Positions 18,093-54,641 are shown, counted from the first letter of the stretch. The stretch is 64,000 nucleotides of DNA from Ranitomeya imitator (GCF_032444005.1 NC_091288.1:16120001-16184000); one strand, 5' to 3'. A program made the numbers and translations. Notes: generated by a model from the sequence alone, not told the origin.

Positions 18093-18706
18093 ATGTTCTC
18101 AAGACTTCTGGGAATTTTTGGAATAACCAATCCGACTTTGCTAAGTGACGATGAGAGAAAGCAGGCCATGGAAGCTAAAGAACGAACAAAACGACTTTTA
18201 TCTGATGCTCTGAAGAAAAAGGAAATTCTGGTGGAAGATCTGAAGTTGTTTAGTGACTTGAAGTTAGAGAACCATAGTCCATTCCTCACCACAAATCTGG
18301 TGGAGGAGCTGAGCCGGGAACTAGAGAAGGTGACGTTTGCAAAAAATAGAATTTCTAAAGAAGATCTAGAAGTTATTGCGTATGTATACCCCGGCTCTGA
18401 TGATAGAACCATCTATCTATGTGCACGATTTTTTAAAATGGATCCAAAATCTAAATCCCAAGAAGCGACAATTATCCACGAGGTTTCCCACTTTCTTGGT
18501 TACGGTCATACAGTCCAGGAGAACAGTGACAGAGTACAGAAGTCTCCACAGTCCATGTTGTGTCCTCAGACGGCTTACTCTGTGGCTTCAGCCCTGACAT
18601 CGTCCATGGACCATCGTGGAACCTTCACAAATGGCTCCTACTCCTGCTGTGGTGAGACCTCCCGGGACACCGTGTGCGAGAAATCCTGGGTTTGTTACTA
18701 TGTCAG
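18093..18706 (+). CDS. M35/aspzincin-like zinc metallopeptidase gene copy 1, peptidase exon (coding part)
   Basis: Acceptor tttctgtacag|AAT at 18031 and ATG at 18093. Encodes AYVYPGSDDRTIYLCARFF, TIIHEVSHFLGYGH and YSCCGETSRDTVCEKS. Donor AG|GTAGGT at 18706/18707. The start codon is inferred. Confidence 0.78.
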
Positions 18707-19485
18707 GTAGGTGTCACATATTTATGTGTTACGTCTAGTAACTTACTAGTATACTATAAATAACCAAAAGAATGGAGAGCAAAGCAAAAAGTGAAGCAGA
18801 AAAAGTTCTAGTTAGGGTTTCACCTCATATGTATGGCAATTTTTCAATTTGTTGCTCTAGCCCTTTATACCCCGAGGAAGATTAAGGGGTGCGCTGACAC
18901 CCCCTGCACTCAGGAGCCGGGTACATGTTCTGGTAGCATTCCTCTAGTTAGGTATATTGGATATATAAACTATGGCGGGAATATTGCTAGAATGATGCAT
19001 CAAAATGTGTTAACTGGGACAATGGTCATAAAAATTTGTCATGTCTTTTAGGACTCCCGTGTTTCAGAACAAATTTACAACAGCTCTGAACTATTCAAAA
19101 TTTTATACGTTTTCTGACGCGACTATCCCGGTGCTGTGAGCGTCCACGCTCCCTTTTGCTTCTGTCACACTTTTTTTGTATTATGTTCTTAAAAAAAAAA
19201 AAGTAAAAAGACACAATTTTTGGCCATACTTGCCTTCTGAGAAATATTTTGGGACTTTTTTTATATAATGTTTTTATGAATATTTGTGGCTAAATGTTTG
19301 CTACATAGATGATAATCATGGCTGCTGTAATCTAGCAACTTCCTAGATACAGATACAATAGAAAGAAGGCAGAATACCTTACAGAAGAACAACATGCAGG
19401 TTCTGATGTTTAACATTAGACCTAACTAGATAATTTAAATTATATATATATATATATATATTTCTTTTTTCATTTTATTTATCAG

Positions 19486-19651
19486 GTCGATGTGCAGAGC
19501 AGAACGACTGAGGAAGCAACTATTGCTGGTGCGGAGATATTCCGATGGTGATGAGACCTATACTAGGGCTACGTTAAGATTAGCGTTGCGCCGCTATTGC
19601 GTCGGCGCCGCAGCGGCGACGCAGCGGCGACGCGCCCTATGTTTAACATAG
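19486..19651 (+). CDS. Copy 1 terminal exon, truncated inside a MITE
   Basis: ttttatttatcag|G TCG ATG TGC AGA GCA GAA CGA CTG is in phase with the upstream donor. (R)SMCRAERLRKQLLLVRRYSDGDETYT is homologous to the paralog tail exons. It reads into the MITE and stops at TAG 19649-19651. Confidence 0.6.
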
Positions 19652-19822
19652 GGGACGCGTGCGTCGTTTTGGTGGCGTTTTTCGCCACGTGCGTCGTTTC
19701 CGACGCTAGCGTCGGACGCAAGAAAACGCTACATGTAGCATTTTCTGTGCGTCCGATTTTCATCAAAAACGACGCACGCGTTTTTGCGCGCGTTGCGTCG
19801 CCACGCTAATGTGAACGTAGCC
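19567..19822. mobile_element. PIF/Harbinger-like MITE inserted in the copy 1 tail exon
   Basis: TIRs GGCTACGTTAAGATTAGCG / CGCTAATGTGAACGTAGCC, flanked by TAG/TAC. Removing it restores colinearity with paralog GATGAGACCGATACTACC. Confidence 0.85.
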
Positions 19823-20358
19823 TACCTGATGATACAGATGTGGCTGATGAAGAGTCAGATACTTTGTAGTGTAAGGACAGTCGCTTCTTTTGAAGATGCC
19901 GATACGTCTGATGACGAGATTCATACTTCTGCAGAGCAGACAGATAATGTTGTACAGTGTGAAAAGAGATGGATGACTCTGATGAAAAGACAGAACTGTT
20001 AATGAAGCAGAAAAATCTGATGAAGAAACAAATCAATCTAATGAAGAAACCGCAAAATCTGATGACGCAGAATAATGTTCTGAAGACAAAGGCGAATAGT
20101 GTGAAGACTCTGGAGGATCAGTTCCAGACAAAGGCCGATTTGGTGACAACAAAAGATGATATAAGGGAGACAGTGGCTGATATGTTGGAGACGGACACAG
20201 ATATGTTGACGACACTGGTGTATATGGTGAAAACAATGGCCAATACTGTGAAGCTTGATTCCATTTTTAGTAAAGATAATGGCCGAAAAATGGTGAAGCG
20301 TGAGGCAAATAAAGTGGAGAGAAAGTTCAATATGTTGAAGACACAATCTGATACTTAA
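19823..20358 (+). pseudogene. Disconnected remainder of the copy 1 acidic/coiled-coil tail
   Basis: DDTDVADEESDTCSVRT..FEDADTSDDEI..EQTD..KRW is homologous to the 40 kb and 55 kb exons. It carries a frameshifting deletion near 19985, then KQKNLMKKQINLMKK heptads. Confidence 0.75.
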
Positions 20359-20556
20359 AAGATAAACCCAAGTACTGTGAAGACTTTGAGTGATATCAGA
20401 AGGATAAAGATGTTGAAGTTACAGGCTGATTTATTGAAAGTACAGACTGATGTTTTCAACCCCAACTATGGGCTCAGGCAAATTGAAATAGAGGCCAAAA
20501 GTAGAATAAAGTTACCAGAATGTCAGTGACTTTAAAAAAAAAAAAGTACAGCTTAA

Positions 20557-21512
20557 CTCCTTAATGACCGCCAATACGCCTTTTAACTGACCTGAGATAT
20601 AAGAGAATAGCCTCCCCATACAGGTAACAATCCAGCAGCTGTCGGCTGTGCACTATAACTGACAACTTTCTGCATCAGCCACGATCAGTGTTTGCACCGT
20701 CCAAATCTGTTTAACCCCTTAGATGCTGCTGTAAATTGTGACTACATCATTATAAATGGTTAACAGAGTGTGGGGGCTTCTTTTTTATCCCAATTGGTGC
20801 CCTCAGATCATGATTGTGAGGTCCTGATGTTTGCGATGGCAATTCACGTCCAAATATCGGCCCTAGAGTCTGATGTCTGTTGTAACCTGTTCAGAAGTTA
20901 GAGACATTTAGGTGGTAATAATACACATTTTCATTTCTGTCATGCCACTTTGCATTAATTCCTGTAGAGCACCTGAAGGGTTAATAAACTACCTGACAGC
21001 AGTTTTCGATATGTCAGGGGGTGTTGTTTTTAAAATGGTATCACGTTTGTGGGTTTCTCAATATATGAGAACCCTAAAGTCACTTCAAACATGGATAAGT
21101 CCCTAAAAAAATAAATTTAGTAAATTTCCTTGAAAAAAATGAAAAATTGCTGCTACATTTTTAAACCTCCTAAAATGCTAAAAAAATAAAATAACATTTT
21201 ACAAATGGTGCTGATGTAAAGCTGACATGCTGGATATGTTATTTATTAATGGTTTGCTGTGGTGTGGCCATCTGGATTAAAGGGATAATCATTCAAATTT
21301 AGAAAATTGCTAATTTTTTCACATTTTTCTCAAATTTTTGATATTTTTTATAAATAAACACAAAACATATTGACCTAAATTTACCATTATCATAAAGTAT
21401 AATGTGTCACGAAAAAACAGTCTCAAAATCACTGGGATTTGTTGAAGCAGAGTTATTACCACATAAAGTGACACTGGTCAGATTTCAAAAATTTGGCTCC
21501 GTCACTAAGGGG
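20557..21512. mobile_element. piggyBac-type non-autonomous element
   Basis: TTAA|CTCCTTAATGAC ... GTCACTAAGGGG|TTAA; TTAA at 20553-20556 and 21513-21516. Confidence 0.75.
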
Positions 21513-21811
21513 TTAAAGAACCATAGAAATCATCTCCACCTGCTATCGGCAGAATTAATTCTCAATATGTATTTATATTAAGCGCTCAGTGAGATTTGCT
21601 GTTGTGTACGCCGGTCTTTTACCGAGTTGTACAGGAGTAGGATTTGACAAATCACATTTAAGAATTCTGTTCACTGATAAAGTTAAAATAGAATTATTCT
21701 GAAAAATAGATTTTAATAAATATAATTAAAAATCATGTATTACCCTCAAAGTTGTGGTAGTAATGCACATTGATGAGGATAATGTTAATGTATAATCCTA
21801 TACATATCCTA

Positions 21812-23293
21812 TCTACTATATAATTGTCTATGGGTCACTTCTGTCTGTCTGTCCTTCTGTCTGTCTGTCCTTCTGTCTGTCGCAGATATTCATTGGACGC
21901 GGCCTCTGTCTGTCATGGAAGCCAAGTCGCTGATTGGTCTCGGCAGCTGCCTGTCATGGCTGCCGTGACCAATCAGCGACGGGCACAGTCCGATTAGTCC
22001 CTCCCCTGCACTCACTGCCCGGCGCCCGCTCCATAATCACCTCCAGTCACCGCTCACACAGGGTTAATGGCCGCGGTGTAGCGCACTCCATTACCGCTGC
22101 TATTAACCGTGTGTCCCCAACTATTTACTATTGACGCTGCCTATGCAAAATCAATAGTAAAAATATGTCATGTTAAAAGTAATAATTAAAAAAAATCCTG
22201 CTATACTCACCATCCGCCGCCTTTCGCGCTCCTCGCGACGCTGCGGTGACCGCTCCATGCAAGCGGCAGGTTCCGGTCCCAATGATGGAACGCCAGAAGG
22301 ACCTTCCATGACGTCACGGTCATGTGACCGCGACGTCATCACACCCTGGGACCGGAAGCTGCCGTCTGCTGTCAACACGGTCATGTGACCACGACGTCAT
22401 CACGGGTCCTGCGCGAGAAGGACCTGCCATGACGTCACGGTCATGTGACCGCGACATCACCACACCCTGGGACCGGAAGCTGACGCCTGCACCGCGCACA
22501 GGACCAGGACTTCAACGGGCGTTTGGAGGGTGAGTATATGTTTATTTTTATTTTAACTCTGTATACTACGTGGCTCTGTGCTGTATACTCTGTCGCTGTG
22601 CAATATACTACGTACGTGGCTGGGCAATATACTACGTGGCTGGGCAATATACTACGTGACTGGGCAATATACTACGTGGCTTGGCAATATACTACGTGGC
22701 TGGGCAATATACTACGTGGCTGGGCAATATACTACGTGGCTGGGCAATATACTACGTGACTGGGCAATATACTACGTGGCTGGGCAATATACTACGTGGC
22801 TGGGCAATATACTACGTGGCTGGGCAATATACTGCGTCGCTGGGCAATATACTGCGTCGCTGAGCAATATACTACGTGGCTGGGCAATATACTGCGTCGC
22901 TGAGCAATATACTACGTGGCTGGGCAATATACTGCGTCACTGGGCAATATACTACGTCGCTGGGCAATATACTGCGTGGCTGGGCAATATACTGCGTGGC
23001 TGGGCAATATACTACGTGGCTGGGCAATATACTGCGTCACTGGGCAATATACTACGTGACTCTGGGCAATATACTACGTGGCTGGGCAATATACTACGTG
23101 ACTCTGGGCAATATACTACGTGGCTGGGCAATATACTACGTGACTGGGTAATTTACTACGTGGCTGGGCAATATACTGCGTCACTGGGCAATATACTACG
23201 TCACTGGGCAATATACTGCGTGGCTGGGCAATATACTATGTGGACATGCATATTCTAGAATACCCGAAGCGTTAGAATCGGGCCACCATCTAG
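21812..23293 (+). mobile_element. Probable non-autonomous Helitron
   Basis: 5' A|TCTACTATAT, (CTGT)n near the start, a subterminal hairpin CCCGA..TCGGG, and a CTAG|T 3' end. No TSD seen. Confidence 0.55.
22600..23240. repeat. 20-bp minisatellite (gtggctgggcaatatactac), ~30 copies
   Basis: Direct head-to-tail repeats with few variants and no spacers. Confidence 0.95.
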
Positions 23294-23400
23294 TATAATA
23301 TATAATCCTAATTAATACCCTATCCTCATGTAGATGGGTATAACAGAAAAAAATAAAGGGACAAAAAGAAAGTCAGAGCCAGAATAGTAGAAATCATTAA

Positions 23401-28740: not shown

Positions 28741-28792
28741 TGTGACTATTTTTTTTACTTCATAATAATAATTATTTATGGGTGTATATATA

Positions 28793-33336: not shown

Positions 33337-33962
33337 ATGAAAACAGTAAGGCCACGGAAGCCAAAGAGAAGGACCATGAATAATCGATGTTTGTTGAGTG
33401 AAGATGAGAGAAAGCAGGCCACGGAAGCTAAAGAACAAACCCAACGACTATTATCTGATGCTCTGAAGAAAAAGGAAAGTCTCCTGGTGGAAGATCCCGA
33501 GGTGTTTGGAGAACTAAATTTGAAGAAGCTTTGTCCATTCCTAACCACAGATCTGGTGGAGGAGCTGATCCGAGAACTAGAGAAAGTGACATTTGCAAAA
33601 AATAAAGATCCCAAGCAAGATATTGGAATTAGTGCGTATGTATACCGCGGCTCTGAAGATAGAACCATCTACCTATGTGCACCATTTTGGAAAATGGATT
33701 CAAAATTTAAATCCCAGCAAGATACAATTATCCACGAGGTTTCCCACTTTATTGGTTATGGTGATACAGTCCAGAAGAACACTGAGGGAGTGCAGAAGTC
33801 TCCACAGTCCATGTTGTGTCCTCAGACCGCTTACTCAGTGGGTTTAGCCCTGACATTGGACATGGATCATCCTGGAACCTTCACAGATGGCTCCTACTCC
33901 TGCTGTGGTGAGACCTCCCGGGACACCGTGTGCGAGAAATCCTGGATCTGTAACCACATCAG
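33337..33962 (+). CDS. M35/aspzincin-like metallopeptidase gene copy 2, peptidase exon
   Basis: Acceptor ttttcag|AAT at 33241, with in-frame ATGs at 33337 and 33376. Encodes AYVYRGSEDRTIYLCAPFW and TIIHEVSHFIGYGD. Donor AG|GTAGGT at 33962/33963. Confidence 0.75.
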
Positions 33963-34000
33963 GTAGGTGTCACATATTTATCTATTTCTAGACAGTATAA

Positions 34001-35060: not shown

Positions 35061-35215
35061 GACGGGCACATTCCCTTGTAACAATAAAAAATGCAAAACG
35101 TGTACCCACATATTACCAACAAATATAGTTCGGACACACCTGTGGGAAAACATTTCTCTGGTCCTGGAAACAGTGTGACAGATTTAAAATTCTTAATACT
35201 AAAAGGTCATTTTAA

Positions 35216-38200
35216 CCCCTTTCTGACATATGACGTACTATCCCGTCGAGGTTGGGTGGGCCCGTATGCCCACCGAAGGGATAGTACGTCATACGCGATC
35301 GGCCGCGCTCACGGGGGGAGCGCGGCCGGGTGTCAGCTGCCTATCGCAGCTGACATCCAGCACTATGTGCCAGGAGCAGTCACGGACCGCCCCCGGCACA
35401 TTAACCCCGGCACACCGCGATCAAACATGATCGCGGTGTGCCGGCAGTATAGGGAAGCATCGCGCACGGAGGGGGCTCCCTGCGGGCTTCCCTGAGACCC
35501 CCGGAGCAACGCGATGTGATCGCGTTGCTGCAAGGGTCTCTTACCTCCTCCTCCTTGCGGGCCCGGATCCAAGATGGCCGCGGCATCCGGGTCCTGCAGG
35601 GAGGGAGGTGGCTTACCAAGTGCCTGCTCAGAGCAGGCGCTTGGTAAGCCGCAGCGCTATAAGTCAGATCGCTGATCTGACAGAGTGCTGTGAAAATTGT
35701 CAGATCAGCGATCTGTGATGTCCCCCCCCCCCCCCCGAGACAAAGTAAAAAAGTTTTTAAAAAAATTTCCACATGTGTAAAAAAATAAAAATAAAAAATT
35801 CCTAAATAAAGAAAAAAAAATATTCCCATAAATACATTTCTTTATCTAAATAAAAAAAAAACAATAAAAGTACACATATTTAGTATCGCCACGTCCGTAA
35901 CGACCCAACCTATAAAACTGTCCCACTAGTTAACCCCTTCAGTAAACACCGTAAGGAAAAAAAAAACGAGGCAAAAAACAACGCTTTATTATCATGGTAC
36001 CGCTGAAAACGTCATCTTGTCCCGCAAAAAACGAGCCGCCATACAGCATCATCAGCAAATAAATAAAAAAGTTATAGTCCTGAGAATAAAGTGATGCCAA
36101 AATAATTATTTTTTCTATAAAATAAAAAACACATAAAAAATGATATAAATGAGGTATCGCTGTAATCGTACTGACTTGAAGAATAAAACTGCTTTATCAA
36201 TTTTACCAAACGCGGAACGGTATAAACGCCTCCCCCAAAAGAAATTCATGAATAGCTGGTTTTTGGTCATTCTGCCTCACAAAAATCGGAATAAAAAGCG
36301 ATCAAAAAATGTCACGTGCCGGAAAATGTTACCAATGAAAACGGCAACTCGTCCCGCAAAAAAACAAGACCTCACATGAGTCTGTGGACTCAAATATGGA
36401 AAAATTATAGCTCTCAAAATGTGGTAATGCAAAAAATATTTTTTGCAATAAAAAGCGTCTTTCAGTGTGTGATGGCTGCCAATCATAAAAATCAGCTAAA
36501 AAACCCACTATAAAAGTAAATCAAAACCCCCTTCATCACCCCCTTAGTTAGGGAAAAATTTAAAAAATGTATTTATTTCCATTTTCCCATTAGGGTTAGG
36601 GCTACGGTTAGGGCTACTGTTAGGGTTAGGGCTAGGGTTAGGGTTAGGGTTAGGGCTAGGGTTAAGGCTACAGTTAGGGTTGGGACTAGGGTTAGGGCTA
36701 GGGTTAGGGCTAGGGTTAGGGTTGGGGCTAGGGTTAAGGCTACAGTTAGGGTTGGGGCTAAAGTTAGGGTTGGGGTTAGGGTTGGGGCTAGGGTTATGGT
36801 TAGGGTTAGGGCTAGGGTTAAGGCTACAGTTAGGGTTAAGGCTACAGTTAGGGCTGGGGCTAAAGTTAGGGTTAGGGTTTGGATTACATTTACAGTTGGG
36901 AAAAGGGTTGGGATTAGGGTTAGGGGTGTGTCTGGATTAGAGGTGTGGTTAGGGTTACCGTTGGGATTAGGGTTAGGGGAGTGTTTGGATTAGGGTTTCA
37001 GTTATAATTGGGGGGTATCCCACTGTTCAGGCCCATCAGGGGCTCTCCAAACACAACATCCGATCTCAATTCCAGCCAATTATGCGTTGAAAAGGTAAAA
37101 CAGTGCTCCTTCCCTTCCGAGCTCTCCTGTGTGCCCAAACAGGGGTTTACCCCAATGTATGGGGTATCAGCGTACTCAGGACAATTGGACAACAACATTT
37201 AGGGTCCAATTTCTCCTGTTACCCTTGGAAAAATACAAAACTGGGGGCTAAAAAATAATTTTTGTGGAAAAAAAAATATATTTTTTATTTGCACGGCTCT
37301 GCGTTATAAACTGTAGTGAAACACTTGGGGGTTCAAAGCTCTCACAACACATTTAGATGAGTTCCTTAGGGGGTCTACTTTCCAAAATGGTGTCACTTGT
37401 GGGGGGTTTCTACTGTTTAGGTACATTAGGGGCTCTGCAAACGCAATGTGACACCTGCAGACCATCCCATCTAAGTCTATATTCCAAATGGCGCTCCTTC
37501 CCTTCTGAGCCCTCCCATGCGCCCAAACGATGGTCCCCCCCCCCCCCCCCCACATATGGGGTATCAGCGCACTCAGGACAAATTGGACAACAACTTTTGG
37601 GGTCCAATTTCTCCTTTTACCCTCGGGAAAATACAAAACTGGGGGCTAAAAAACAATTTTTGGGGGAAAAAATTTTTGTTTTATTTTTACGGCTCTGCAT
37701 TATAAACTTCTGTGAAGCCCTTGGTGGGTCAAAGTGCTCACCACACATCTAGATAAGTTCCTTAGGGGGTCTACTTTCCAAAATGGTGTCACTTGTGGGG
37801 GGTTTCAATGTTTAGGCACATCAGTGGCTCTCCAAATGCAACAAGGCGTCCCATCTCAATTCCTGTCAATTTTGCATTGAAAAGTCAAACGGCGCTCCTT
37901 CCCTTCCGAGCTCTCCCATGCGCCCAAACAGTGGTTTACCCCCACATATGGGGTATCAGCATACTTAGGACAAATTGTACAACAACCTTTGGGGTCCAAT
38001 TTCTTCTCTTACCCTTGGGAAAATAAAAAATTGGGGGCGAAAAGATAATTTTTGTGAAAAATATGATTTTTTATTTTTACGGTTCTGCATTATAAAGTTC
38101 TGTGAAGCACTTGGTGGGTCTAAGTGCTCACCACACCTCTACATAAGTTCCTTAAGGGGTTTACTTTCCAAAATGGTGTCACTTGTGGGGGGTTTCAATG

Positions 38201-40025: not shown

Positions 40026-40881
40026 GTTGGTGAAGTTGATGAACAAAATAGAACATCTGTGGAAACAAATATTGCTGGTGCCGAGATGTCCTGCTGGGGA
40101 TGAGACCGATGCTACCAGTGATGATACAGAAGAGTTGGGGGCAGATACTTGTAACGTAAAGACAGACTGTTCTTCTGAAGATCCGGATATATCTGACGAT
40201 GAGATAGAGGCGTCTGAGGAGCAAACATATATTGTTATGCAGATGGTAAAGAGATGGACGACTCTGGTGAAGACTCAGTCCGGTCTGTTGAAGACACAAA
40301 CCAATTTGTTAGAGAAGCAGAAAGATCTGATGAAACAAAACAATCAATTGAAAACGGAGACAAATCAATTGAAGACGCAGAGAAATCTATTGAAGACACA
40401 AAGAAATCTATTGAAGACGAAGAGAAAGCTATTGACGCAGAGAAATCTATTGAAGACGCAGAGAAATCTATTGAGTCAGAGAAATCTATTGAAGACTCAG
40501 AGAAATCTATTGAGGCAGAGAAATCTATTGAAGACGCAGAGAAATCTATTGAGTCAGAGAAATCTATTGAAGACGCAGAGAAATCTATTGAGGCAGAGAA
40601 ATCTATTGAGGCAGAGAAATCTATTGAGGCAGAGAAATCTATTGAAGACACAGAGAAATCTATTGAAGACGCAGAGAAATCTGTTAATGGCACAGGATAA
40701 TGTTTCGAAGGAAGAGATCAATATGTTGGAGACAGAGGTCGACATGTTGGAGACACGGTTCAATATGTTTAAGACATCGGACAATGTGGAGAAAACAAAG
40801 GCGGATGTGGTGAACACCCTGAGCGATTTACTGAAGACACTGGCCGATGTGTTGGAGACACAGTATATGCGGAAACATTGA
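40026..40881 (+). CDS. Copy 2 terminal exon: acidic linker plus 16 RNLL-type repeats (predicted coiled coil)
   Basis: (tta)n tgtatcag|G TTG GTG AAG. The phase-2 junction gives H-I-R-L-V-K-L. Open for 284 codons to TGA. Spliced product from ATG 33337 is 493 aa by my arithmetic. Confidence 0.78.
40372..40690 (+). repeat. Coding minisatellite of mixed 21-nt and 18-nt units
   Basis: agagaaatctattgaagacgc (RNLLKTQ) and agagaaatctattgaggc/gagtc (RNLLRQ/RNLLSQ). Confidence 0.95.
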
Positions 40882-44770: not shown

Positions 44771-45416
44771 TCTAAACAGCTGATATATTTGTATTTTCCA
44801 CCAAAATGTATTTACCCCAAATATTACCATTTTGTTTTCAGATGTTATCATAGAATGCATAAATAATGCCTCTACATAGTATCCAAATAACAGCAATTTA
44901 TAGAACGATAGATTTTCCACATAAGTCCAAGAAATCTACAGTGCAGTGTTTATAATTCAATACAGTACAATGTCAACCATACAATACCTAAATAACACTC
45001 TTGTTTGCAGTCTAGATAATATTGCCAAACAGGGTAAGGGTTAAAGGTTTTTTTTTTTACCTCCAGTTATCACATATGTGCACTCATTTCCGGCCCCTTT
45101 AAGTCCCTAAGGACTAAGGCCTTTATCATCACAGAGACCACCGCTTTCCACCAATACTCCATCCCAAGTGCTAAAATTAAAAGAGTCATTCTTCACTTTA
45201 GGCAAGGTCATGACGACTGAAGAATGGATACGAGTCACGACATCTTATGTAAAGTGGACGTCCCACTAAAGGTTGGGAGGGTAAAGGGGGAAACACTCAG
45301 AATGTTCCTGAATGGGGTTTCTGGTGACCGTTTTTGATACAAATTTTCCTTGTAAACAAAAAAGTTTGTAAACAAAAGGAAAATGAAAGAAATGAAGGGA
45401 GTTTTTGTGCCACTAA

Positions 45417-45982
45417 GGCTACTTTCACACATCAGGTTTTTGCCGTCAGGCACAATCCGGCGTGTTTTGAAAGAAAAAACGGATCCGTTTTTTTCTTCTG
45501 CCGGATCTTTTTTTTCTCATAGAGTAGTATTAGCGCCTGATGGCCACACGTTTCATTCGTTCTTTCCCTGATCCATCAAAAAAGTTGTTTCCGGCGGACG
45601 GAGAAAACGTACAGAGGAACGTTTTTTCTGTCCGGTGAAAAAACGCCCAGGTACTGATCCGGCCAAAAACGGATGAAGCGGAGATGTGAAATTATGAATC
45701 CGGCTTCCGAATCCGGTTTTCCCTGCATTCTCCATTCAAGTCCTGCACATTTTCCATTCTGGTCTCTCTCTGTCTCTCTCTCTCTCATACTCTCTCTGTC
45801 TCTCTCTCTCCTCCCCCCCTCGGAATAGGAAGTCACTGTTTCCCCGGGTTAAAAAGACAAAAACGGATCCAGCAGAAAAACGGATCCGTCGCATCAGTTT
45901 TTTACTATTTGCGACGGCTCCGTTTTTTTACAAATTTGCCGGATTGTGCCTGAACCAAAAAAACTGATGTGTGAAAGTAGCC
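45417..45982. mobile_element. PIF/Harbinger-like MITE with (CT)n interior
   Basis: TIRs GGCTACTTTCACACATCAG / CTGATGTGTGAAAGTAGCC flanked by TAA/TTA. Confidence 0.85.
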
Positions 45983-45985
45983 TTA

Positions 45986-46800
45986 CAGTTATGTGCAAAA
46001 TAATAGCAGTCTAACATCACTAATATGTTTAATTACTGTTTTGAGCAGAAAAGATCATACAATGTGGGAAAAAAATTAATGACTAGGTGTAGGCGAGTAA
46101 TGTGCAGCCAACAGAGTCAACAGTCATGAAATGCACGCTGCTAATTGGGTGTAGTTGTGTACCGAAGGAGGAAGAAGTTTGTTCATGAAGTTGATTAGAG
46201 AGGGGAAAACAGGTAAAAAAGTGAAGAAAAGAATTGGCTGTTCAGCTTAAGATTTCCAATGCTTTAAAATGGCAAACAATACCTGAAATACGTGGTAGGA
46301 AAATAAATACTACCAGCCGCATAGATCATAGAATAACAAGAATGGCAAAGAAGTCTCCAATGATCGGCTCCAGGGAGATCAGAGAAGATCTTCAGTTACC
46401 TGTCAGTTTTGCAACCATCAGAACACACCTTCATGATGCCAAACTATTTGCAAGAAACCCTCGTAAAGTACCATTGTTGAAATAAAGACATGTTGAAAAG
46501 ATTACAGTTTGCCAAAGAACACATTGACCGGCCTAAAGAGAAGAGTCCGACATTCTATGGACAGATAAGAGCAAGGTTGTTCTTATTGGGTGTAGAGGCT
46601 GCAGAAAGTTTGTGAGACCACCCATAAGTGAATTCAGGCCACCGTACAATGTGAAGACTGGAAAATATGGAGGTGCGAGCAGAATGATTTGGAGATGTTT
46701 CTTATACTATGGAGTTGGGCCCATTTATCGCATACCAGGCACCATGGAAAAGTGTGAATGTAGCACAATATTGGAAGAGGTCATGTTGCCTTATGCTGGA
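45986..46800 (+). mobile_element. Old Tc1-like element, 3'-truncated
   Basis: TA|CAGTTATGTGCAAAATAATAGCAGT start. Degenerate transposase pieces ARNPRKVPLL, FAKEH and GVGPIYRIPG. Confidence 0.75.
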
Positions 46801-47305
46801 GAAATTATATTGCTGGTGCTGAGACCGATGCTACCAGTGATGATACAGATGCCCCGGCAGAAGAGTTGGGGACAGATACTTGTAGCATAAAGACAGACTG
46901 TTCTTCTGAAGATCCGGATATATCTGATAACGAGATAGATGCGTCTGAGGAGCGGACAGATATTGTTATGAAGATGATAAAGAGATGGACCAATCTGGTG
47001 AAAACTCAGGCCGGTCTGTTGAAGACACAAACCAATTTGTTAGAGAAGCAGAAAGATCTGATGAAGCAAATCAATCGAAGATGCAGAGAAATCCTGTTGA
47101 AACAAACTAACTTCTTCAAGCCATATGATAATGTTTTGAAGGAAAAGGCCACTATGGTAAAGACACTGGTCGATATATGGGAGACGCAACCAAAATGTTG
47201 GAGACACAGGTCAATGTGGAGAAGATAAAGGCGGATGTGGTGAAGACCCTGAGCGATATGCTGCAGATACTGGCCGATGTGTTGGAGACACAGTACATGC
47301 GTAAA
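46801..47305 (+). pseudogene. Orphan, decayed tail exon (copy 3) lacking its peptidase exon
   Basis: TDATSDDTDAPAEELGTDTCSIKTDCSSEDPDISDNEIDASEE..KRWTNLVKTQAGLLKTQTNLLEKQKDLMKQ. The 5' end is fused to the Tc1 fragment, later frameshifts are present, and an LTR sits in the last codons. Confidence 0.82.
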
Positions 47306-48418
47306 TACAGCACCCCAAGTAGCCGGTTGTTGCAGTGATGTTGCCTTCCCTTCGGGGAGGGTGATATCACGCTTGGAGGCAAGTGAGATTCTTTCTATCA
47401 GGTAAGGCACTTACATTCAGCACATCTGAATCTAGGCCAGGAGGGGGAGCTCTGAACCCGGATTCAAGGGAGCGTCCCTTAGCTATATGCATCCTTGTCT
47501 GGAGGAGGAGTCAGCCAGTTGTAGAGGACTGAGGAGAGGAGAAAGACGTCTGTACCAGACAGAGGGGTGACACAGCCAAGTGGGAGCTGTGGCCTCTGGA
47601 AAGCGTGAGAACTTGAAGGAGTTAAATAGTGAGGAGCTGAGAGGGAAGAAGCACAGTGGAGGAAAGGGCTCAGGAGGGGAACAGCAGACGGACACCCTCA
47701 GAGCCAGAGCGCAGAAGCCGGGTACCGGGAGCCCGAGGTCGTGTTGTTCTCCAGAATGCACAACAGAAGCGGAGGGCATAGGACTATATGTCAATTGCCT
47801 GTAATAAGTCAGTGGTGAAGCAGTAACCCTTAGAGCAGGGTCATCTAAGAGATCTTATAAACAGGCTCAAACTGCCTATCGTACAGACATCTGTCTTAGG
47901 ACAGGAGAGAGGGGACCCTGTCAGCAAGCTTTAAGCCGCAGGGACCTCACCATCTGGTGCAAGTAGGAAAGGCTTATGGACCTCACCTGAAGTGGGATCC
48001 CATATTGCCTCCAAGACGGCCGGAACACAGCTACCCTACACCTGGTACCCTGCACTGAGGACTGCTACCATCAGTAAACCAGGTATAAGACTGCAAACTC
48101 TGTGTCCTCCACTTATTCGTCGGCATACACCATCTTTGCCACACACCTTGGGAGCCTTGGGGACATACTTCACCTGTGGGAAGTTATACCATCTAGCTGC
48201 CATACCATCCCCCTAGAGGACCCCTTTAAGCAGCGTCAGTCCTACTGACCAAATACCACAGGTTGCGCCACGAACAATAGACTTTATTCATAAAACCCCT
48301 AAAAGACTTTACCTTTAATTGGACACCCAGGGCCACGGACCGGGTCGCAGCCACCATGACATCCCCTTTAAGACCATACCCGGTACCGAGTACTCAACGG
48401 CCCTGCCGGGGCGCTCCA
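47306..48418. mobile_element. Solo LTR inserted at the end of the orphan tail exon
   Basis: TACAGCACCCC...GGGGCGCTCCA termini; 4-bp TSD TAAA at 47302-47305 and 48419-48422. Confidence 0.8.
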
Positions 48419-51206
48419 TAAACGTAGGTCGTTACATTCTAGACGAAGGCCAATGTTTTGTTTTTTTAACAAGTATTGGTTAAAGAAATTGAAATAATGG
48501 CAGAAAATAATGTTCTAGAATCTCAATGACTTAACCCTATAAATATACAATTTTTTTGTGTCCTTTTACGCCATGAAAAAGAGGGTAAAACAATATGATG
48601 ATTATATCACTACATGTACCATACATTATTGATTTCATAATCATAGCTCAGATCAGAGATACCAAAATCGACCATTATTACCATTTGCATATAGTAATTA
48701 TAAATGTAATCCACCTATCGTTCGCTGCCTGGAAACCATCGAGAAATTCATTTTGGTTGAATTAATTCTCATCTCAGCAATGAACCTGCATTTTGATGTT
48801 TTCCATGTAAAATCTACATAGAAGCCGATACCTGCAGTTATCATTTTACTTTGTAAACCAAATAAATTACAATTGTTCTTGCGAGACTCTGTATTCTCCC
48901 TTATAACGTAATTGTAAAATTATTAGCCAAGAGGAGGATGAACCGCACTGCAGACTATGGATGAACTTATAGAATAGACTTTATTTAAATCAGTACCTCA
49001 AAAATCACTGCAGCATTGCAGGAATGGTTTTGGACCGAAAACATGTGTTTTTTTCAGGTTCTATGAGAAGGTTTAAGGGCAGCATTGTCTCTTATTGATG
49101 TCTACTCTACTTCTGGGTAAGAAGGATAACTATGGGCCTAATAATCTGAGACACAATTTAAAAAAAAAACCTTCTGGTCCAAGTGACATGTGATGTGAGT
49201 GATCAGTGATATATGAGCCATTACATTATAAAGCAGAAATGCCAAAGGTCTAAAATATAAGATGCCACTAAGTAGTGAGGTCTGAAGAGCTGCTCATTAA
49301 GAGTAGGGTTGACACTTGACAGTTTGGTGTCAGCATTAGCATGTGTGCACAGAGAACATAAAATATTCTTGTTGTCCCATCAGTAGAGGTCAGACACTTG
49401 CAGAAGAATAGCCTGTCAGAACGAAGGAGATGATGTGGTGCCCAGAATTAAAAGTCTGCATTACAGCTATCTAAAAGTGGGGGTGAGTAGTGTTTGTTAT
49501 ATATGGTTCCCACAACAAAAATGAGGGCCTCAGAGAAGCCAGAAGTAAAGCAGGAGTATCAGCTTGTACTGGCGGTATAGTCTGTCCCAGGCGAGAAGAT
49601 CTGCCCTTCAGTATGTGAGTACTGTCGCTAAGAAAATAGCACAAGGAGATCTTCCATGGGTGGGAGCATAGAGGTAAGTTAACCGTGAGTGAAGAGTGCA
49701 TCTTCTGACAGAGTGAAGGTAGAGTTGTTTGAAAAAGTGTTGGGGGCAAACACTTTTTCACACAACTGCAAGCCACCATAAAGCCAAAGATCTGCCACAG
49801 AAAAGGAGAACATATTAGCTAATGTCACGTCACTTTTAAGATTGCATTTTCGGTTCTACTGACGACATTATAATGATCTGTATAATTATAATTGAAACTT
49901 ATTGAGATGAACCTCAGCTTCCCAGATTTGTGGTCTCCTGAACTTCATTCTGTTTCCTATATTATTATTTGAAGATCTGTATAAGGCCGGAGTCACACTA
50001 GAGAGAAATATGGACGAGTGCTATGTGATAAAACATATCGATGTATGTAAGATATTGGGTAATATTGGGGCCACAATACGTAAGCTGGCAACCCACATCA
50101 AGGGTTCTTACATTTTGCCAGTCCTAATGCTAAACATTAAACAAAGCTCACAGACACTAAAAGAGGACTTAAAAAATCCTCCAAAAATTTTTAAAAAGTC
50201 ACAGAAAAAGGCAGAGATGATTACCTTGCTTGTGTGAATAATGCCACATACAGACTATTATTTTTTATCTTTTTGTGCACTAAAATACCAAACAGCCAAC
50301 ACTGGATTGAAAGTGGTTGTTTCATCGGTATGGCTGCACCTGTGCTTCTGCCATCATTAATCGGGTCTGCTGCACCCTGCCAGTGCATTTGTTTTGTAGG
50401 CCTGAGCAGGTAATCATCTCTGCTTTTTTTCTCTGTGACTTTTTTCAAATTTTTGGAGGATTTTTTAAGTCCTCTTTTTGTGTCTGTGAGCTTCCCTTCA
50501 GATGGATTTACATCGTGGGACGTGACTGTACGGCGGACAGATATGGGATATTGTTGCTTTTTTATTTTCCTTTTTTTTCAGAAGAATGAGGGTTGTCAGT
50601 TGAATTGAGCGTACAATAAAGATATTAAAACCCCATGTGTTTTTTTATTTCATTAAAATACTTTATTCATAATGTGTTTGTGTTTTTTAACCCTTTACTA
50701 CTATTGGATTAATAATGGATAGGCGTCTTATTGACATCTCTACATTATTAACCAGGCTTAATGTTACCTTACACTACCAAGGTGACATTAACCCTTTATT
50801 ACCCCATATCCCACCGCTACAGGGGAGTGGGAAGAGAGTGGCTAAGTGCCAGAGTGGGCGCATCTTCCAGATGTGCCTTTTCTGTGGTGGCTTGGGGCAG
50901 ATGTTTTTAGCCCTCAGTCACTGGCTTTCCCACTCTGGAGGAGAAAATTGCGCCGGCGCCCACACCATTTTTTTCCGTGAATTAATCCTTTAATTTAACA
51001 CCTACAGCTCCAAAATTTAACACACACATAGTACTAACATTATTAATCAATCAGGGACATATAAAAATCTAACAGATATGCATTGGTTTACTGTATGTAA
51101 ACCATGTCTCATATCCTGTCGGGTTCTGTAATGATTTTACAGAAGCCGAGAATTGATTTTTCACCTATTCTGCTATCTATCTCTGTATAAAATATATATC
51201 TATATA

Positions 51207-52731
51207 CCGTATATAGTCGAGTATAAGCCGACCGGAGTATAAGCCGACCCCCCTAATTTTGCCACAAAAAACTGGGAAAACTTATTGACTTGAGTATAAG
51301 CCAAGGGTGGAAATGCAGCATTTACCGGTGAATTTTAAAAAATAAAAATAGATCATTATTTCCCCATAGATGTACCATATAGTGCTCTGTACCGTTCATA
51401 TTTCCCCATAGCTGTGCCATATAGTGCTCTGCGCCGTTCATTTTTGCCCCATAGCTGTGCCATATAGTGCTCTGCACCGTTCATATTTCCCCTTAGCTGT
51501 GCCATATAGTGCTCTGCACCGTTCATTATTGCCCCATAGCTGTGCCATATAGTGCTCTGCACCGTTCATATTCCCCCTTGGCTGTGCCATATAGTGCTTT
51601 GCACCGTTCATATTTCCCCATAGCTGTGCCATATAGTGCTCTGCACCGTTCATATTTCCCCATAGCTGTGCCATATAGTGCTCTGCACCGTTCATATTTC
51701 CCCATAGCTGTGCCATATAGTGCTCTGCACCGTTCATATTTTCCCATATCTGCCCCATATAGTGCTCTGCACCGTTCATATTGCCCCATATCTGCCCCAT
51801 ATAGTGCTCTGCACCGTTCATATTGCCCCATATCTGCCCCATATAGTGCTCTGCACCGTTCATATTGCCCCATATCTGCCCCATATAGTGCTCTGCACCG
51901 TTCATATTGCCCCATATCTGCCCCATATAGTGCTCTGCACTGTTCATATTGCCCCATAGCTGTGCCATATAGTGTTCTGCACCGTTCCTATTGCCGCATA
52001 TCTGCCCCATATAGTGTTCTGCACCGTTCCTATTGCCCCATATCTGCCCCATATAGTGCTCTGGACCGTTCATATTGCCCCATAGATGCTCGGTATAAAT
52101 CTGTGCCGCCGCTGCTGCTGCAATAAAAAAAAAAGCCATACTCACCTCTCTTGATTGCAGCTCCCGGCGTCTCGTCCCGGCGTCTCTCCGCTCTGAGTGA
52201 TCAGGTAGAGGGCGCCGCGCACACTATATGCGTCATCGCGCCCTCTGACCTGCACAGTCAGAGCGCAGATAGACGCCGGGAAGATGGAGCGGCGCTCGGC
52301 GGCTGGAACGGCGCTCAGCGGCTGGAACGCGGACAGGTGAATATTACATACTTACCTGGTCCCGACGTCCGGCTCCCCCTGCCGTCTCACGGTCTTCTGT
52401 GCTGCAGCTTCTTCCCCTTTTCAGCAGTCACTGGCACCGCCGATTAGAGAAATGAATAGGCGGCTCCACCCCTATGGGAGGTGGAGCCGCTTATTCATTT
52501 CTCTAATGAGCGGTCCCATGTGACCGCTGAACAGTGGAAGAACTGTAGCACCGAAGACCTGGGACAGGCGGGGAGCGCCAGGATCGCTGGGACTAGGTAA
52601 GTATACCTCAGCGCCCTCACCCCCTCACCCGCCGACCCCACAGCTACCGTGACTCGAGTATAAGCCGAGAGGGGCACTTTCAGCCCAAAAATTTGGGCTG
52701 AAAATCTCCGCTTATACTCGAGTATATACGG
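51207..52731. mobile_element. TcMar/Tc2-like non-autonomous element
   Basis: TA|CCGTATATAGTCGAGTATAAGC ... GCTTATACTCGAGTATATACGG|TA. Confidence 0.8.
51360..52085. repeat. 30-bp minisatellite (ccccatagctgtgccatatagtgctctgcaccgttcatatt-like units)
   Basis: More than 20 head-to-tail units in two subtypes, inside the Tc2-like element. Confidence 0.95.
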
Positions 52732-53979
52732 TATGTGTCTCACTTACATATATGTAGAGAGAGAGAGACTGTATATATATTTTCACAAATATTTGAGGTC
52801 ATGGACACATTATTTGTCCATTTTGCAAGCCAGTGAGAAAATCTCGCTGTACGGATGCCATACACATGTCACACGGATACTTTGATGTGAGGAAATCGCA
52901 TCCTCACATTGCAGACTGATGACATACAGATCACGGTTCATGAAACATTTGTGCGATTCTTGTCCGTGAAAAACCGTGACCGCGACATCATCGAAGGTCC
53001 TTCACTCTCTGCATTCTTAGGAACGGAGGCAGACGCTTGCAGTGCTGAGAGCCAGGGTTCGTCGGAGGGCTGAGTATATCCATATTTTTTATTTTTATTC
53101 TTTATTTTTTACATGAATATGGATCCCAGGGCCTGAAGGAGAATCTCCTCTCCTCCAGACCATGGGAACCACACGCCGTATAAGATGACCCACGTCTTAT
53201 ACGACGGGTATATCCCAAATTCCATATTTTATATGGAAAAGTTGGGGGTCGTCTTATACGCCCAGTCGTCTTATACACCAGAAAATACTGTATGTCGCTT
53301 ATACCTCATGGTGATAGGGATAATATTTCAATTAAAAAAAAAAAATTGTAGAATTGCTGTTTTTCCATTCCTTTCTTTGCAAAATGTGAATTCAAGTTTT
53401 TCAATACTTTATATAAAACCAGAATATGGTAATTAAAAACAACAAGCTCTAAAGAAAATTAAATTATGGCTCTTGGTGATGAAGCTCCGGATTTCAGTAC
53501 AATCATCTAATGGTGGATCTTATTTCATCTTGGAGAATTATTGCGCCGTCTTGAAGAATTATTAAGTTAATGATGCTAAATTGTAAACAAATCAAACAAT
53601 ATTAAAAGCTAAAAAAAAGTGTAAAAATAAACAATGGTCTTTGTTCTCACTGTTCTTGTGATGTTTTTCCTTTTGTGACTTGCTCATACTTTGTGTAAGT
53701 AATGGCAGTGGAGCCTTCTGTATGAAATAAAAACTACATTTCACCATTGAGCAACAGCATTGAAAAATTAAAATGTTTGCTCTGAAAACAAAACGCCAAT
53801 GACAATGGAAGGGATTTTCCGTGTGGCTATTCTGCTGTATGGGAAAAATCTGTTTACTCTGCTTCTATATGACGTAATAAAAGTTGTCTGTAGTGAAAAT
53901 GAAAGGAACTTTTTCTGCACAGAATATCAAGAAGACGTCAGAATAACTTGGACAGGTAACAATTCCTGTAGACTGGACG

Positions 53980-54641
53980 ATGATCTGGCTTCTGAAGCTC
54001 TTGTTGGTACTGGAAACAATTCAAGTGAGGCTAAAGAAGATAAAGAGAAGGACCAGGAACAATCCATGTTTTCTGAGTAAAGATGAGATAAAAGAAGCCG
54101 AAGAAGCTAAAGAACGAACCCAACGACTTTTATCTGATGCTCTGAAGAAAAAAGAAAGTCTCCTGGTGGAAGATCCCAAGGTGTTTGGAGACCTAAACTT
54201 GAAGAAGCTTTGTCCATTCCTAACCACAGATCTGGTGGAGGAGCTGATCCGAGAACTAGAGAAAGTGACGTTTGCAAAAAATAAAGATCCTAAGCAAGAT
54301 ATTGGAACTGTTGCGTATGTATACCGCGGCTCTGAAGATAGAACCATCTACCTATGTGAACTATTTTGGAAAATGGATCCAAAATTTAAGTCCCATCAAG
54401 ACACAATTATCCACGAGGTTTGCCACATTCTTGGTTATGATCATACAGTCCAGGAGAACAGTGACGGAGTGCAGAAGTCTCCACAGTCCATGTTATGTCC
54501 TCAGACCACTTTCTCGGTGGCTTCAGCCCTGACATCATCCATGGATCATCCTGGAACCTTCACAGACGGCTCCTACTCCTGCTGTGGTGAGACCTCCCGG
54601 GACACCGTGTGCGAGAAATCCTGGATCTGTAACCACATCAG
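53980..54641 (+). CDS. M35/aspzincin-like metallopeptidase gene copy 4, peptidase exon
   Basis: Acceptor ttttctgcacag|AAT at 53922. ATG at 53980 is homologous to the ATG of copy 1. Encodes AYVYRGSEDRTIYLCELFW and TIIHEVCHILGYDH. Donor AG|GTAGGT at 54641/54642. Confidence 0.8.

What the first reader, a model, noticed from the sequence alone, without database searches (positions are those of the whole stretch)
18477..54444. Zinc site rewired: HExxHxxGxxH/D instead of HExxH+GTxD, and variable between paralogs
Seen: HEVSHFLGYGH (18477-18509), HEVSHFIGYGD (33733-33765) and HEVCHILGYDH (54412-54444). No GTxDxxYG follows. Known: in aspzincins the third Zn ligand is an Asp in GTxD, about 9 residues after the second His. 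Metzincins use HExxHxxGxxH, or D in snapalysin. Inference: an M35-type scaffold may have acquired a metzincin-spaced third ligand, with a His/Asp swap in copy 2. Alternatively the site is degenerate and these are pseudo-proteases. The catalytic Glu is kept in all three copies.
Basis: partly seen in the sequence, partly recalled or inferred. Interest (0 to 1): 0.72.

Follow-up and report, generated by a model that had tools for sequence, protein, structure and literature searches.

The report
Frog aspzincin genes with His/Asp zinc ligand
Three neighbouring poison-frog genes encode a fungal/bacterial-type (aspzincin) zinc-protease domain whose third zinc-binding residue is the family's usual aspartate position, moved three residues closer to HExxH in all vertebrate members and changed to histidine in most frog copies, so the site is an ordinary substitution in an unstudied vertebrate family and not a newly invented ligand.

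Summary
They lie in three tandem two-exon genes of Ranitomeya imitator or a very close relative.

Pfam, Foldseek and VIA-align place the domain in the aspzincin (M35) fold (Z 10-11). Metzincins score Z 3.5-3.8.

The claim that no GTxDxxYG follows holds only as a string. Salamander, fish, lizard, turtle and ostrich homologues read HExxHxxGTxDxxY(G). Two profile comparisons open a 3-residue gap and align the +6 residue with Asp130 of GfMEP, a documented zinc ligand. So the metzincin-like spacing comes from a short linker that is ancestral to the vertebrate family.

Asp is the state in all 25 non-anuran domains. His is derived in frogs (40 of 47). Copy 2's Asp is a recent CAT-to-GAT reversion, is seen in three independent runs, and sits in a spliced transcript. 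All 72 domains that keep HExxH have only H or D at +6.

Frogs also lost the +9 Tyr and the NADN helix motif, so catalytic activity is unproven. An invariant Btk-type H..CC..C zinc finger follows the domain.

The scan met this gene family before, about 62 kb beyond this window. No paper on a vertebrate aspzincin was found. Zinc-site geometry could not be measured.

The parts
18093..18706 (+). Copy 1, coding exon 1: N-terminal helices, aspzincin-like domain and Btk-type zinc finger. It ends at the donor AG|gtaggt, and the in-frame TAG that follows is intronic.
   Evidence: ORF; Pfam Aspzincin_M35 38.9 bits; 86% identical to the R. imitator protein P0001 from the ATG at 18093; donor position; AF2 model pLDDT 88
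18477..18509 (+). Copy 1 zinc motif HEVSHFLGYGH: His117 (18477-79), Glu118, His121 (18489-91), Gly124, Tyr125, His127 (CAT, 18507-09). Numbering is that of the 193-residue domain starting at 18129.
   Evidence: His127 aligns with the GTxD Asp of canonical aspzincins, and this family column aligns with Asp130 of GfMEP
18612..18677 (+). Copy 1 Btk-type zinc finger: His162, Cys173, Cys174, Cys183 (H-x10-CC-x8-C)
   Evidence: codons verified; invariant columns; HCCC present in 112 of 114 domains; Pfam BTK 19 bits, below the cut-off of 24 for this copy
19486..19651 (+). Copy 1 exon 2, truncated. The acceptor is tatcag|G. An insertion of about 256 nt after 19565 brings in a stop at 19649-51, and the coiled-coil coding remnants up to about 20445 are out of frame and carry stops. 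The predicted product is 259 aa.
33337..33962 (+). Copy 2, coding exon 1 (the Asp variant)
   Evidence: ORF; Pfam Aspzincin_M35 35.5 and BTK 25.1 bits; donor at 33962; covered by contigs of 4 runs
33733..33765 (+). Copy 2 zinc motif HEVSHFIGYGD, with Asp127 = GAT at 33763-65
   Evidence: no differing letter at 33763 in runs X1, X14 and X15; nested in a 23-row frog clade that is otherwise all His
33868..33933 (+). Copy 2 Btk-type zinc finger (His162, Cys173, Cys174, Cys183)
40026..40881 (+). Copy 2 exon 2: acidic stretch and QRNLLKT-type heptad repeats. The spliced ORF is 493 aa.
   Evidence: The X14 contig ends at 33969 with loose letters AAGTTGATG, which equal window 40033-40041; joined translation
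53980..54641 (+). Copy 3, coding exon 1
   Evidence: ORF; 98.7% identical to P0027 of R. imitator; Pfam Aspzincin_M35 33.5 and BTK 24.9 bits
54412..54444 (+). Copy 3 zinc motif HEVCHILGYDH, with His127 = CAT at 54442-44
54547..54612 (+). Copy 3 Btk-type zinc finger
55392..56130 (+). Copy 3 exon 2 (acidic stretch and heptad-repeat tail). The spliced ORF is 466 aa, the same length as P0027.
46770..47314 (+). Orphan exon-2-like fragment (tail repeats) with no adjacent protease exon
   Evidence: tblastn with P0027, P0031 and P0051 at 65-70% identity

Best explanation
Each of the three tandem genes encodes a protein with no clear signal peptide (judged by eye), so it is probably cytosolic. The protein has an aspzincin (M35-fold) domain, a Btk-type zinc finger and a tail exon. 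The catalytic zinc is most likely held by the two His of HExxH on the active-site helix and by the residue six positions after the second His, on the coil just after the Gly124 turn. Glu118 would act as the general base. The +6 residue is the homologue of the aspzincin GTxD aspartate (Asp130 of GfMEP). In the whole vertebrate family the linker between HExxH and GTxD is three residues shorter than in GfMEP, and this alone produces the metzincin/snapalysin-like string HExxHxxGxxD. Asp is the ancestral state, found in fishes, salamanders, reptiles and ostrich. In the frog lineage GTxDxxY became GYx(H/D)xx(Q/E), and most copies have His. Copy 2 of this window went back from His to Asp by one base change (CAT to GAT) and is transcribed and spliced. 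A second, structural zinc is probably bound by the invariant His162, Cys173, Cys174 and Cys183. Shown here: homology of the position, fold, conservation, direction of change, and expression of copy 2. Inferred: actual zinc ligation by residue 127, zinc in the finger, cytosolic location, and peptidase activity (about even odds, because frogs lost the +9 Tyr and the NADN helix motif).
For: Fold: Pfam Aspzincin_M35 above cut-off for all three copies. The AF2 model has pLDDT 88 and pTM 0.88. Foldseek's top hits are GfMEP, AsaP1 and deuterolysin, and VIA-align gives them Z 10.1-11.2 over 125-136 residues spanning the whole of GfMEP. Homology of +6: literal GTxDxxY(G) two residues after HExxH in Phrynosoma, Anolis, Ambystoma, Pleurodeles, Trichomycterus and Colossoma relatives. 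hhalign of family against canonical aspzincins gives 99.8% and E 3.7e-29 with a 3-residue gap, pairing His127 with the GTxD Asp. The HMMER family profile against 1g12 (E 7e-13) pairs this column with Asp130 and +9 with Tyr133. Asp130 is a crystallographic zinc ligand lying on a coil (PMC3268031 Table 1), and residue 127 of the model lies on the coil after helix 110-122 in a block of pLDDT 94. Constraint: 72 of 72 HExxH-intact domains have H (40) or D (32) at +6 and nothing else; among 42 domains without HExxH only 18 do. Glu118 never goes missing when both His are present. Neighbouring candidates such as +10 (E 33, K 10 and others) are not conserved. Direction: the non-anuran clade is 25 of 25 Asp; the anuran clade (support 100) is 40 His and 7 Asp; copy 2 is inside a 23-row clade with 22 His (support 100); the tree needs 3 changes at least. 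Expression: a spliced contig joins 33962 to 40026. dN/dS is 0.47-0.58. The +6 spacing with Gly at +3 is described as a zinc-site motif in other zincins (HEXXHXXGXXD; PMC3890501).
Against: No model coordinates were available, so the distance of residue 127 from the two His could not be measured, and AF2 places no metal. The coupling between loss of HExxH and relaxation at +6 rests on only 5 phylogenetically independent contrasts: the same direction in about 2, never opposite, not significant. The raw Fisher p of 1e-13 ignores relatedness. Frogs have lost other aspzincin signature residues. The Tyr133 equivalent is Q/E and others in 47 of 48 domains that have Tyr at +4. The Asn152-Ala153-Asp154 equivalents, of which Asp154 hydrogen-bonds His117 in GfMEP, are replaced by T/S-x-Y/W. 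dN/dS of about 0.5 is only moderate constraint. Copy 1 has a broken tail exon. The tree was made with the quick method and has long branches among the outgroups.
Confidence: 0.75

Rival explanations
1. Pseudo-proteases: the zinc site is kept, with His127 or Asp127 as ligand, but the frog proteins no longer cleave peptides. The domain would serve as a zinc-dependent binding or scaffolding module, or as a decoy.
For: The anuran clade lost the Tyr133 equivalent and the NADN helix motif, including the Asp154 equivalent (roles in GfMEP and, for Tyr133, from memory). 42 of 114 family domains have lost HExxH altogether, often as the first domain of two-domain proteins, so non-catalytic use of this fold is common in the family. 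dN/dS is about 0.5.
Against: Glu118, which is not a metal ligand, is invariant wherever both His are present, in 72 of 72 domains. This is expected for catalysis and not for mere metal binding. The site has been kept across anuran diversity while sister paralogues lost it completely, an all-or-none pattern. Frogs gained a near-invariant Tyr at +4 and an aromatic residue at the Asp154 position, which could replace the lost Tyr (inference).
Confidence: 0.2
2. One reading: the aspzincin third ligand (GTxD) was lost and a new, metzincin-spaced ligand arose independently at +6.
For: A gapless alignment to GfMEP puts Gln at the Asp130 column. The string matches HExxHxxGxxH/D.
Against: Relatives in the same BTK-bearing family carry a literal GTxDxxY(G) at +3 to +9/+10. 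Both profile comparisons align +6 with the canonical Asp. There is no conserved Met-turn, and metzincin structures score only Z 3.5-3.8 and TM about 0.24.
Confidence: 0.03
3. Residue 127 is not a ligand. The third ligand is another residue, such as the +10 Glu or the invariant His162, or the site binds no metal.
For: The geometry was not measured. His162 is invariant.
Against: +10 is E in 33, K in 10 and other residues in 5 of 48 domains, and it is Lys in copy 2. His162 stays invariant together with CC..C in 40 of 42 domains that have lost HExxH, so it belongs to the finger and not to the catalytic site. Only +6 is restricted to metal-binding residues.
Confidence: 0.04

Closest known systems
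Aspzincins (MEROPS M35, Pfam PF14521): GfMEP / peptidyl-Lys metalloendopeptidase (1g12, 1ge6), AsaP1 (2x3a-c), deuterolysin (1eb6)
   Same: Same fold (Z 10-11). Same AYVYP...IYLC...FW lead-in and HExxH helix. The third ligand sits at the homologous GTxD position on a coil after the helix. Non-frog members also keep the xxY and NA(D/N)NxEYEF motifs.
   Different: The linker from the second His to the ligand is 6 residues instead of 9 (GfMEP). In the frog copies the ligand is His (Asp in copy 2), Thr128 is replaced by Tyr, Tyr133 by Gln or Glu, and the NAD motif is lost. A C-terminal Btk-type zinc finger and a coiled-coil or ApoL tail are added. There is no clear signal peptide or propeptide (by eye), and the host is a vertebrate, whereas the aspzincin papers retrieved here concern fungi and bacteria.
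Metzincins, including snapalysin (M7, 1kuh), with HExxHxxGxxH/D
   Same: Identical linear motif, including the Gly at +3 and natural use of either His or Asp as third ligand (PMC3890501; snapalysin's Asp from memory).
   Different: Different fold: TM about 0.24 for snapalysin and Z 3.5-3.8 for MMPs. There is no conserved Met-turn: the Met of QSMLCP is absent in ranid, Pelobates and Discoglossus members. The resemblance is convergence in spacing, not kinship beyond clan MA.
Mini-zincins / 'Asp-zincin' motif proteins (PF06262, PDB 3E11)
   Same: HEXXHXXGXXD motif with a predicted His, His, Asp zinc site; intracellular; the third ligand varies among homologues (PMC3890501).
   Different: These are bacterial proteins of about 110 residues with almost nothing after the third ligand. 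The window copies give no Pfam Zincin_1 hit, and minigluzincin structures reach only Z of about 5.
Btk motif (PF00779) of Tec-family kinases
   Same: H-x10/11-CC-x8/9-C pattern. Pfam scores are above cut-off for copies 2 and 3 and for many homologues.
   Different: It follows a protease domain instead of a PH domain. Zinc binding is inferred only.

Membership tests
Aspzincin (M35, PF14521) | HExxH with catalytic Glu on the active-site helix | tested here: met
   HEVSH or HEVCH in all three copies; lies in model helix 110-122
Aspzincin (M35, PF14521) | Profile match above Pfam's gathering score | tested here: met
   38.9, 35.5 and 33.5 bits against 30, but covering only profile positions 41-109 of 142
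Aspzincin (M35, PF14521) | Aspzincin three-dimensional fold | tested here: met
   VIA-align Z 10.1-11.2 to 2x3c, 1ge6, 1g12 and 1eb6, with the next family at 6.7; Foldseek top 7 hits are all aspzincins. This rests on a predicted model.
Aspzincin (M35, PF14521) | GTxDxxYG motif whose Asp is the third zinc ligand | tested here: inconclusive
   The literal motif is absent in the window copies (GYGHTVQE, GYGDTVQK, GYDHTVQE). The position is homologous, and the literal motif is present in non-frog members of the same family. Asp is present only in copy 2. Tyr and the second Gly are lost.
Aspzincin (M35, PF14521) | C-terminal helix motif NADxxEYF (Asp154 hydrogen-bonds His117 in GfMEP) | tested here: not met
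   Frog copies read TAYSVASAL, TAYSVGLAL and TTFSVASAL. Non-anuran members keep NA(D/N)NxEYEFE. The role of Asp154 is from PMC3268031.
Aspzincin (M35, PF14521) | Zinc-dependent endopeptidase activity | not testable with these tools
   Needs recombinant protein.
Metzincin | HExxHxxGxxH/D string | tested here: met
Metzincin | Conserved Met-turn beneath the zinc site | tested here: not met
   No conserved Met downstream. QSMLCP in dendrobatid and hylid copies corresponds to QYKLCP or QHKLCP in ranids and to NNETVK in Pelobates.
Metzincin | Metzincin fold | tested here: not met
   Snapalysin TM 0.24; MMPs Z 3.5-3.8, against 10-11 for aspzincins
Btk motif zinc finger (PF00779) | His plus three Cys in the H..CC..C pattern and a profile score above cut-off | tested here: met
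   Pattern present in all three copies and in 112 of 114 domains. Pfam gives 25.1 and 24.9 bits (cut-off 24) for copies 2 and 3 but 19.0 for copy 1.
Btk motif zinc finger (PF00779) | Sits next to a PH domain, as in Tec kinases (from memory) | tested here: not met
   No PH domain in the Pfam scans of the window ORFs or the full-length homologues

The most novel reading that the evidence does not exclude
A previously unstudied, probably cytosolic vertebrate aspzincin family (fishes to birds, fused to ApoL or coiled-coil tails and stapled by a Btk-type zinc finger) has rebuilt its catalytic zinc shell in frogs. The third ligand changed from Asp to His, giving a His3 site that converges on the metzincin motif inside a different fold. 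The catalytic Tyr may have moved from +9 to +4. Expressed tandem paralogues naturally toggle between His and Asp. If the copies are active, they would offer a natural matched set for asking how the identity of the third ligand tunes a zincin. The tandem expansion, the frequent pseudo-enzyme copies and the ApoL fusions would also point to an innate-immunity protease family.
Probability: 0.3. Interest if true: 0.65.

Novelty: new variant of a known kind. Interest (0 to 1): 0.45.

Why it matters
The aspzincin papers retrieved here concern secreted fungal and bacterial enzymes and virulence factors. No paper in the searchable library treats a vertebrate member. This locus shows that vertebrates carry an expanded family of them, probably intracellular, with a compact HExxHxxGTxD site and an added zinc finger. 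It also shows that frogs replaced the defining Asp ligand by His while keeping the fold. That explains the apparent hybrid aspzincin/metzincin motif in a simple way, as linker length plus one substitution. It also gives protein chemists naturally occurring, expressed His and Asp versions of one site, 92% identical in DNA, for testing the effect of ligand identity on metal affinity and catalysis. It does not reveal a new kind of zinc site.

Tried and rejected
1. A gapless HMMER alignment of copy 1 to GfMEP put Gln at the Asp130 column and suggested the ligand was lost. I rejected this once family profiles opened a 3-residue gap.

2. I looked for the model's coordinates to measure ligand distances. 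None are exposed, so the geometry is untested.

3. A phylogenetically controlled test of the coupling between HExxH loss and relaxation at +6 found only 5 independent contrasts, so it is not significant. I do not rely on the raw Fisher test.

4. A Met-turn reading of QSMLCP was rejected, because the Met is not conserved outside hyloid frogs.

5. Alternative ligands (+10 Glu, His162) were rejected on conservation grounds.

6. The runs found are contigs of uncertain library type. Depth cannot be used, and only one spliced junction (run X14, with a probable second in X2) shows transcription. Expression of copies 1 and 3 was not tested.

7. My regular-expression search for a clean long exon 2 of copy 1 failed. 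The exon turned out to be truncated by an insertion.

8. Two literature searches found nothing on vertebrate M35-like proteins. Subscription journals are not covered.

9. Not used: the second structure job and the third word search.


Full report
**Observation**

The three strings are present exactly as reported on the + strand: HEVSHFLGYGH at 18477-18509, HEVSHFIGYGD at 33733-33765 and HEVCHILGYDH at 54412-54444. The codons at the +6 position are CAT, GAT and CAT. They lie in three paralogous ORFs of about 215 codons that are 85-92% identical in DNA.

**Gene structure and source**

- The annotated Ranitomeya imitator protein P0027 (466 aa) matches copy 3 at 98.7% over exon 1 and 99.6% over exon 2. 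The window is therefore R. imitator or a very close relative.
- Each gene has two coding exons. Exon 1 ends at a conserved donor ATCAG|gtaggt, so the TAG that closes the mechanical ORF is intronic.
- Copy 3 is 53980-54641 plus 55392-56130 (466 aa).
- Copy 2 is 33337-33962 plus 40026-40881 (493 aa).
- Copy 1 is 18093-18706 plus 19486-19651. Its tail exon is cut short by an insertion of about 256 nt, and the downstream coiled-coil remnants are out of frame.
- An orphan tail-exon fragment lies at 46770-47314.
- The scan had already met another copy about 62 kb beyond this window. An earlier follow-up read it as a two-exon aspzincin/heptad-tail gene, which agrees with what I see here.

**The domain is an aspzincin**

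- Pfam Aspzincin_M35 scores 38.9, 35.5 and 33.5 bits against a cut-off of 30.
- An AlphaFold2 model of the copy 1 domain (193 residues, 48-sequence alignment) has mean pLDDT 88 and pTM 0.88.
- Foldseek's seven best PDB hits are all aspzincins: GfMEP, AsaP1 and deuterolysin, with TM about 0.5. Snapalysin scores 0.24.
- VIA-align gives Z 10.1-11.2 for the aspzincins over 125-136 residues spanning the whole of GfMEP. The next family (Pra1) scores 6.7, and MMPs score 3.5-3.8.

Metzincin kinship is excluded beyond the clan level.

**Where the +6 residue comes from**

Word and profile searches found the family across anurans and in lizards, turtles and alligator. An exhaustive profile search added salamanders (Ambystoma, Pleurodeles), otophysan fishes (Trichomycterus, Colossoma) and ostrich. 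I ran that search because the claim depends on which distant relatives exist.

In these non-frog members the sequence after HExxH is a literal aspzincin motif starting two residues later. Examples are HEVSHFLGTDDIAYG (Phrynosoma), HEASHFLGTEDLAYG (Ambystoma) and HEVSHFLGTEDATY (Trichomycterus). The distant tail of the same search consists of canonical aspzincins reading HExSHFxxxxGTxDxxYG. Counting literal motifs, the Asp is at +6 in the BTK-bearing family and mostly at +9 elsewhere, with a few at +6, +7 or +13.

Two independent profile comparisons make the equivalence explicit:

- hhalign of a 53-sequence family alignment against 28 canonical aspzincins gives probability 99.8% and E 3.7e-29. 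It opens a 3-residue gap after HExxHF and pairs His127 of copy 1 with the GTxD Asp.
- The HMMER family profile against GfMEP (E 7e-13) pairs this column with Asp130 and +9 with Tyr133.

Asp130, with His117 and His121, is the crystallographic zinc ligand set of GfMEP and lies on a coil after the helix (PMC3268031 Table 1). In the model, residue 127 lies on the coil after helix 110-122 in a block of pLDDT 94.

The earlier gapless alignment that put Gln at the Asp column was therefore misleading. The metzincin-like spacing is a family-wide short linker, not a newly acquired ligand. The HEXXHXXGXXD spacing is also already described as a zinc-site motif in other zincins (PMC3890501).

**Is +6 constrained like a ligand?**

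- Among 72 domains that keep HExxH, the +6 column holds only His (40) or Asp (32). Among 42 domains that lost HExxH it holds H or D in 18 and nine other residues in 24.
- The raw association is strong (Fisher p = 1e-13), but the tree gives only five independent contrasts. The constraint goes the same way in about two and never the opposite way, which is not significant. I treat this as consistent with a ligand, not as proof.
- Glu118 is never missing when both His are present. That argues for catalysis and not just metal binding.
- Other nearby acidic residues are not conserved. Position +10 is Lys in copy 2.

**Direction of change**

On a tree of the 72 intact domains, with the trait column removed, the non-anuran clade is 25 of 25 Asp. 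The anuran clade (support 100, stem length 1.07) has 40 His and 7 Asp: five Pelobates domains, one Xenopus tropicalis paralogue and copy 2. Three changes suffice.

Copy 2 is nested in a 23-row, fully supported frog clade in which every other member has His. Its Asp is therefore a recent His-to-Asp reversion by one base. The codon is confirmed by contigs of three runs from three studies.

A contig of run X14 ends at 33969 with the loose letters AAGTTGATG, which occur once in the window, at 40033-40041, seven bases into exon 2. The contig reads across the 33962|40026 junction, so copy 2 is transcribed and spliced.

Pairwise dN/dS among the three exons is 0.47-0.58. This indicates constrained but fast-evolving genes.

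**What really is rewired in frogs**

- Besides Asp to His, the frog clade changed GTxDxxY to GYx(H/D)xx(Q/E...). Thr128 became a near-invariant Tyr at +4, and the Tyr133 equivalent was lost. It is Tyr in 23 of 24 domains without Tyr at +4, and in 1 of 48 domains with it.
- The second aspzincin signature, NA(D/N)NxEYEFE, is invariant N-A in all 25 non-anuran domains. In frogs it became T/S-x-Y/W-x-V/I.
- In GfMEP, Asp154 of that motif hydrogen-bonds His117, and the Thr128 carbonyl hydrogen-bonds His121.

The title 'zinc site rewired' is thus fair for the second shell in anurans. Whether the frog enzymes still cleave peptides is open. I put a pseudo-protease reading at about 0.2.

**Second zinc site**

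His162, Cys173, Cys174 and Cys183 (H-x10-CC-x8-C) are invariant. Pfam reports the BTK motif above cut-off for copies 2 and 3 and for many homologues. The pattern is kept in 112 of 114 domains, including 40 of 42 that lost HExxH. It is therefore a structural element independent of the catalytic site. VIA alignments to GfMEP end at about residue 164 of the model, so the finger is an addition to the aspzincin fold.

**Wider context**

- Family members carry different tails: acidic plus heptad repeats in frogs, and ApoL domains in a turtle and in ostrich, and by precomputed Pfam in Platysternon and alligator.
- Many frog proteins have two or three tandem domains, often an HExxH-less one followed by an intact one.
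- The N-termini show no clear signal peptide by eye. No predictor was available.
- Tandem expansion, frequent catalytic-site loss and ApoL fusion suggest an immune-type family. That is inference only.
- No paper on a vertebrate aspzincin was found in two searches.

**Verdict**

The locus holds three expressed or expressible members of an unstudied vertebrate aspzincin family. Their third zinc ligand is the canonical GTxD position on a short linker, with His derived in frogs and Asp regained in copy 2. This is a new variant of a known kind, of moderate interest.

The read-laying run used 5901 letters.

Noticed in passing
window 18612-18677, 33868-33933, 54547-54612: An invariant H-x10-CC-x8-C element, matching Pfam's BTK motif, follows the protease domain directly. 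It is kept in 112 of 114 family domains, including those that lost HExxH. A Btk-type finger attached to a protease fold instead of a PH domain appears to be undescribed.
   Followed up: partly
window 19486-20445: Copy 1's tail exon is truncated. An insertion of about 256 nt, partly GC-rich, after 19565 brings in a stop at 19649-51, and the remaining heptad-repeat coding sequence is out of frame with stops. The catalytic exon is intact.
   Followed up: yes
window 46770-47314 (and 45054-45312): An orphan tail-exon copy, 65-70% identical to annotated R. imitator tails, has no protease exon next to it. A second small piece matches the C-terminus of P0051.
   Followed up: no
P0055, P0057, P0061, P0083 (turtles, alligator, ostrich): In sauropsids the same aspzincin and finger module is fused to an Apolipoprotein L domain. 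Pfam ApoL scores 100.8 bits in Chrysemys, and the ostrich gene is annotated 'apolipoprotein L3'.
   Followed up: partly
P0018-P0026, P0035-P0048 (frog homologues): Many frog proteins carry two or three tandem copies of the domain. In ranids and several other lineages the first domain lacks HExxH and the second keeps it, giving a pseudo-enzyme plus enzyme arrangement.
   Followed up: partly
P0098 (Halteria grandinella, ciliate), P0102, P0104: A ciliate protein and some unnamed metagenomic or Logan proteins match the family profile. Some have an H..CC..C pattern but a longer linker (HEVSHFKHVLDLVDY). They may be intermediates or a separate lineage.
   Followed up: no
window 58997-62502, - strand: A Ty3/Gypsy-type LTR retrotransposon: ORFs with gag-asp protease, RVT_1, RNase H, integrase zinc-binding, SH3_Tf2-1 and chromo domains.
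   Followed up: partly
window 6854-8056, - strand: A 400-aa ORF with a Spin-doc type C2H2 zinc finger (PF18658, 41 bits). It is possibly derived from a transposon.
   Followed up: no
window 35800-37400: Very high contig depth, up to about 170,000 in one run, marks highly repeated and probably highly transcribed repeats inside the intron of copy 2.
   Followed up: no
window 8000-14000: A block with GC of 54-56% and negative GC and AT skew stands out from the background of about 40% GC.
   Followed up: no
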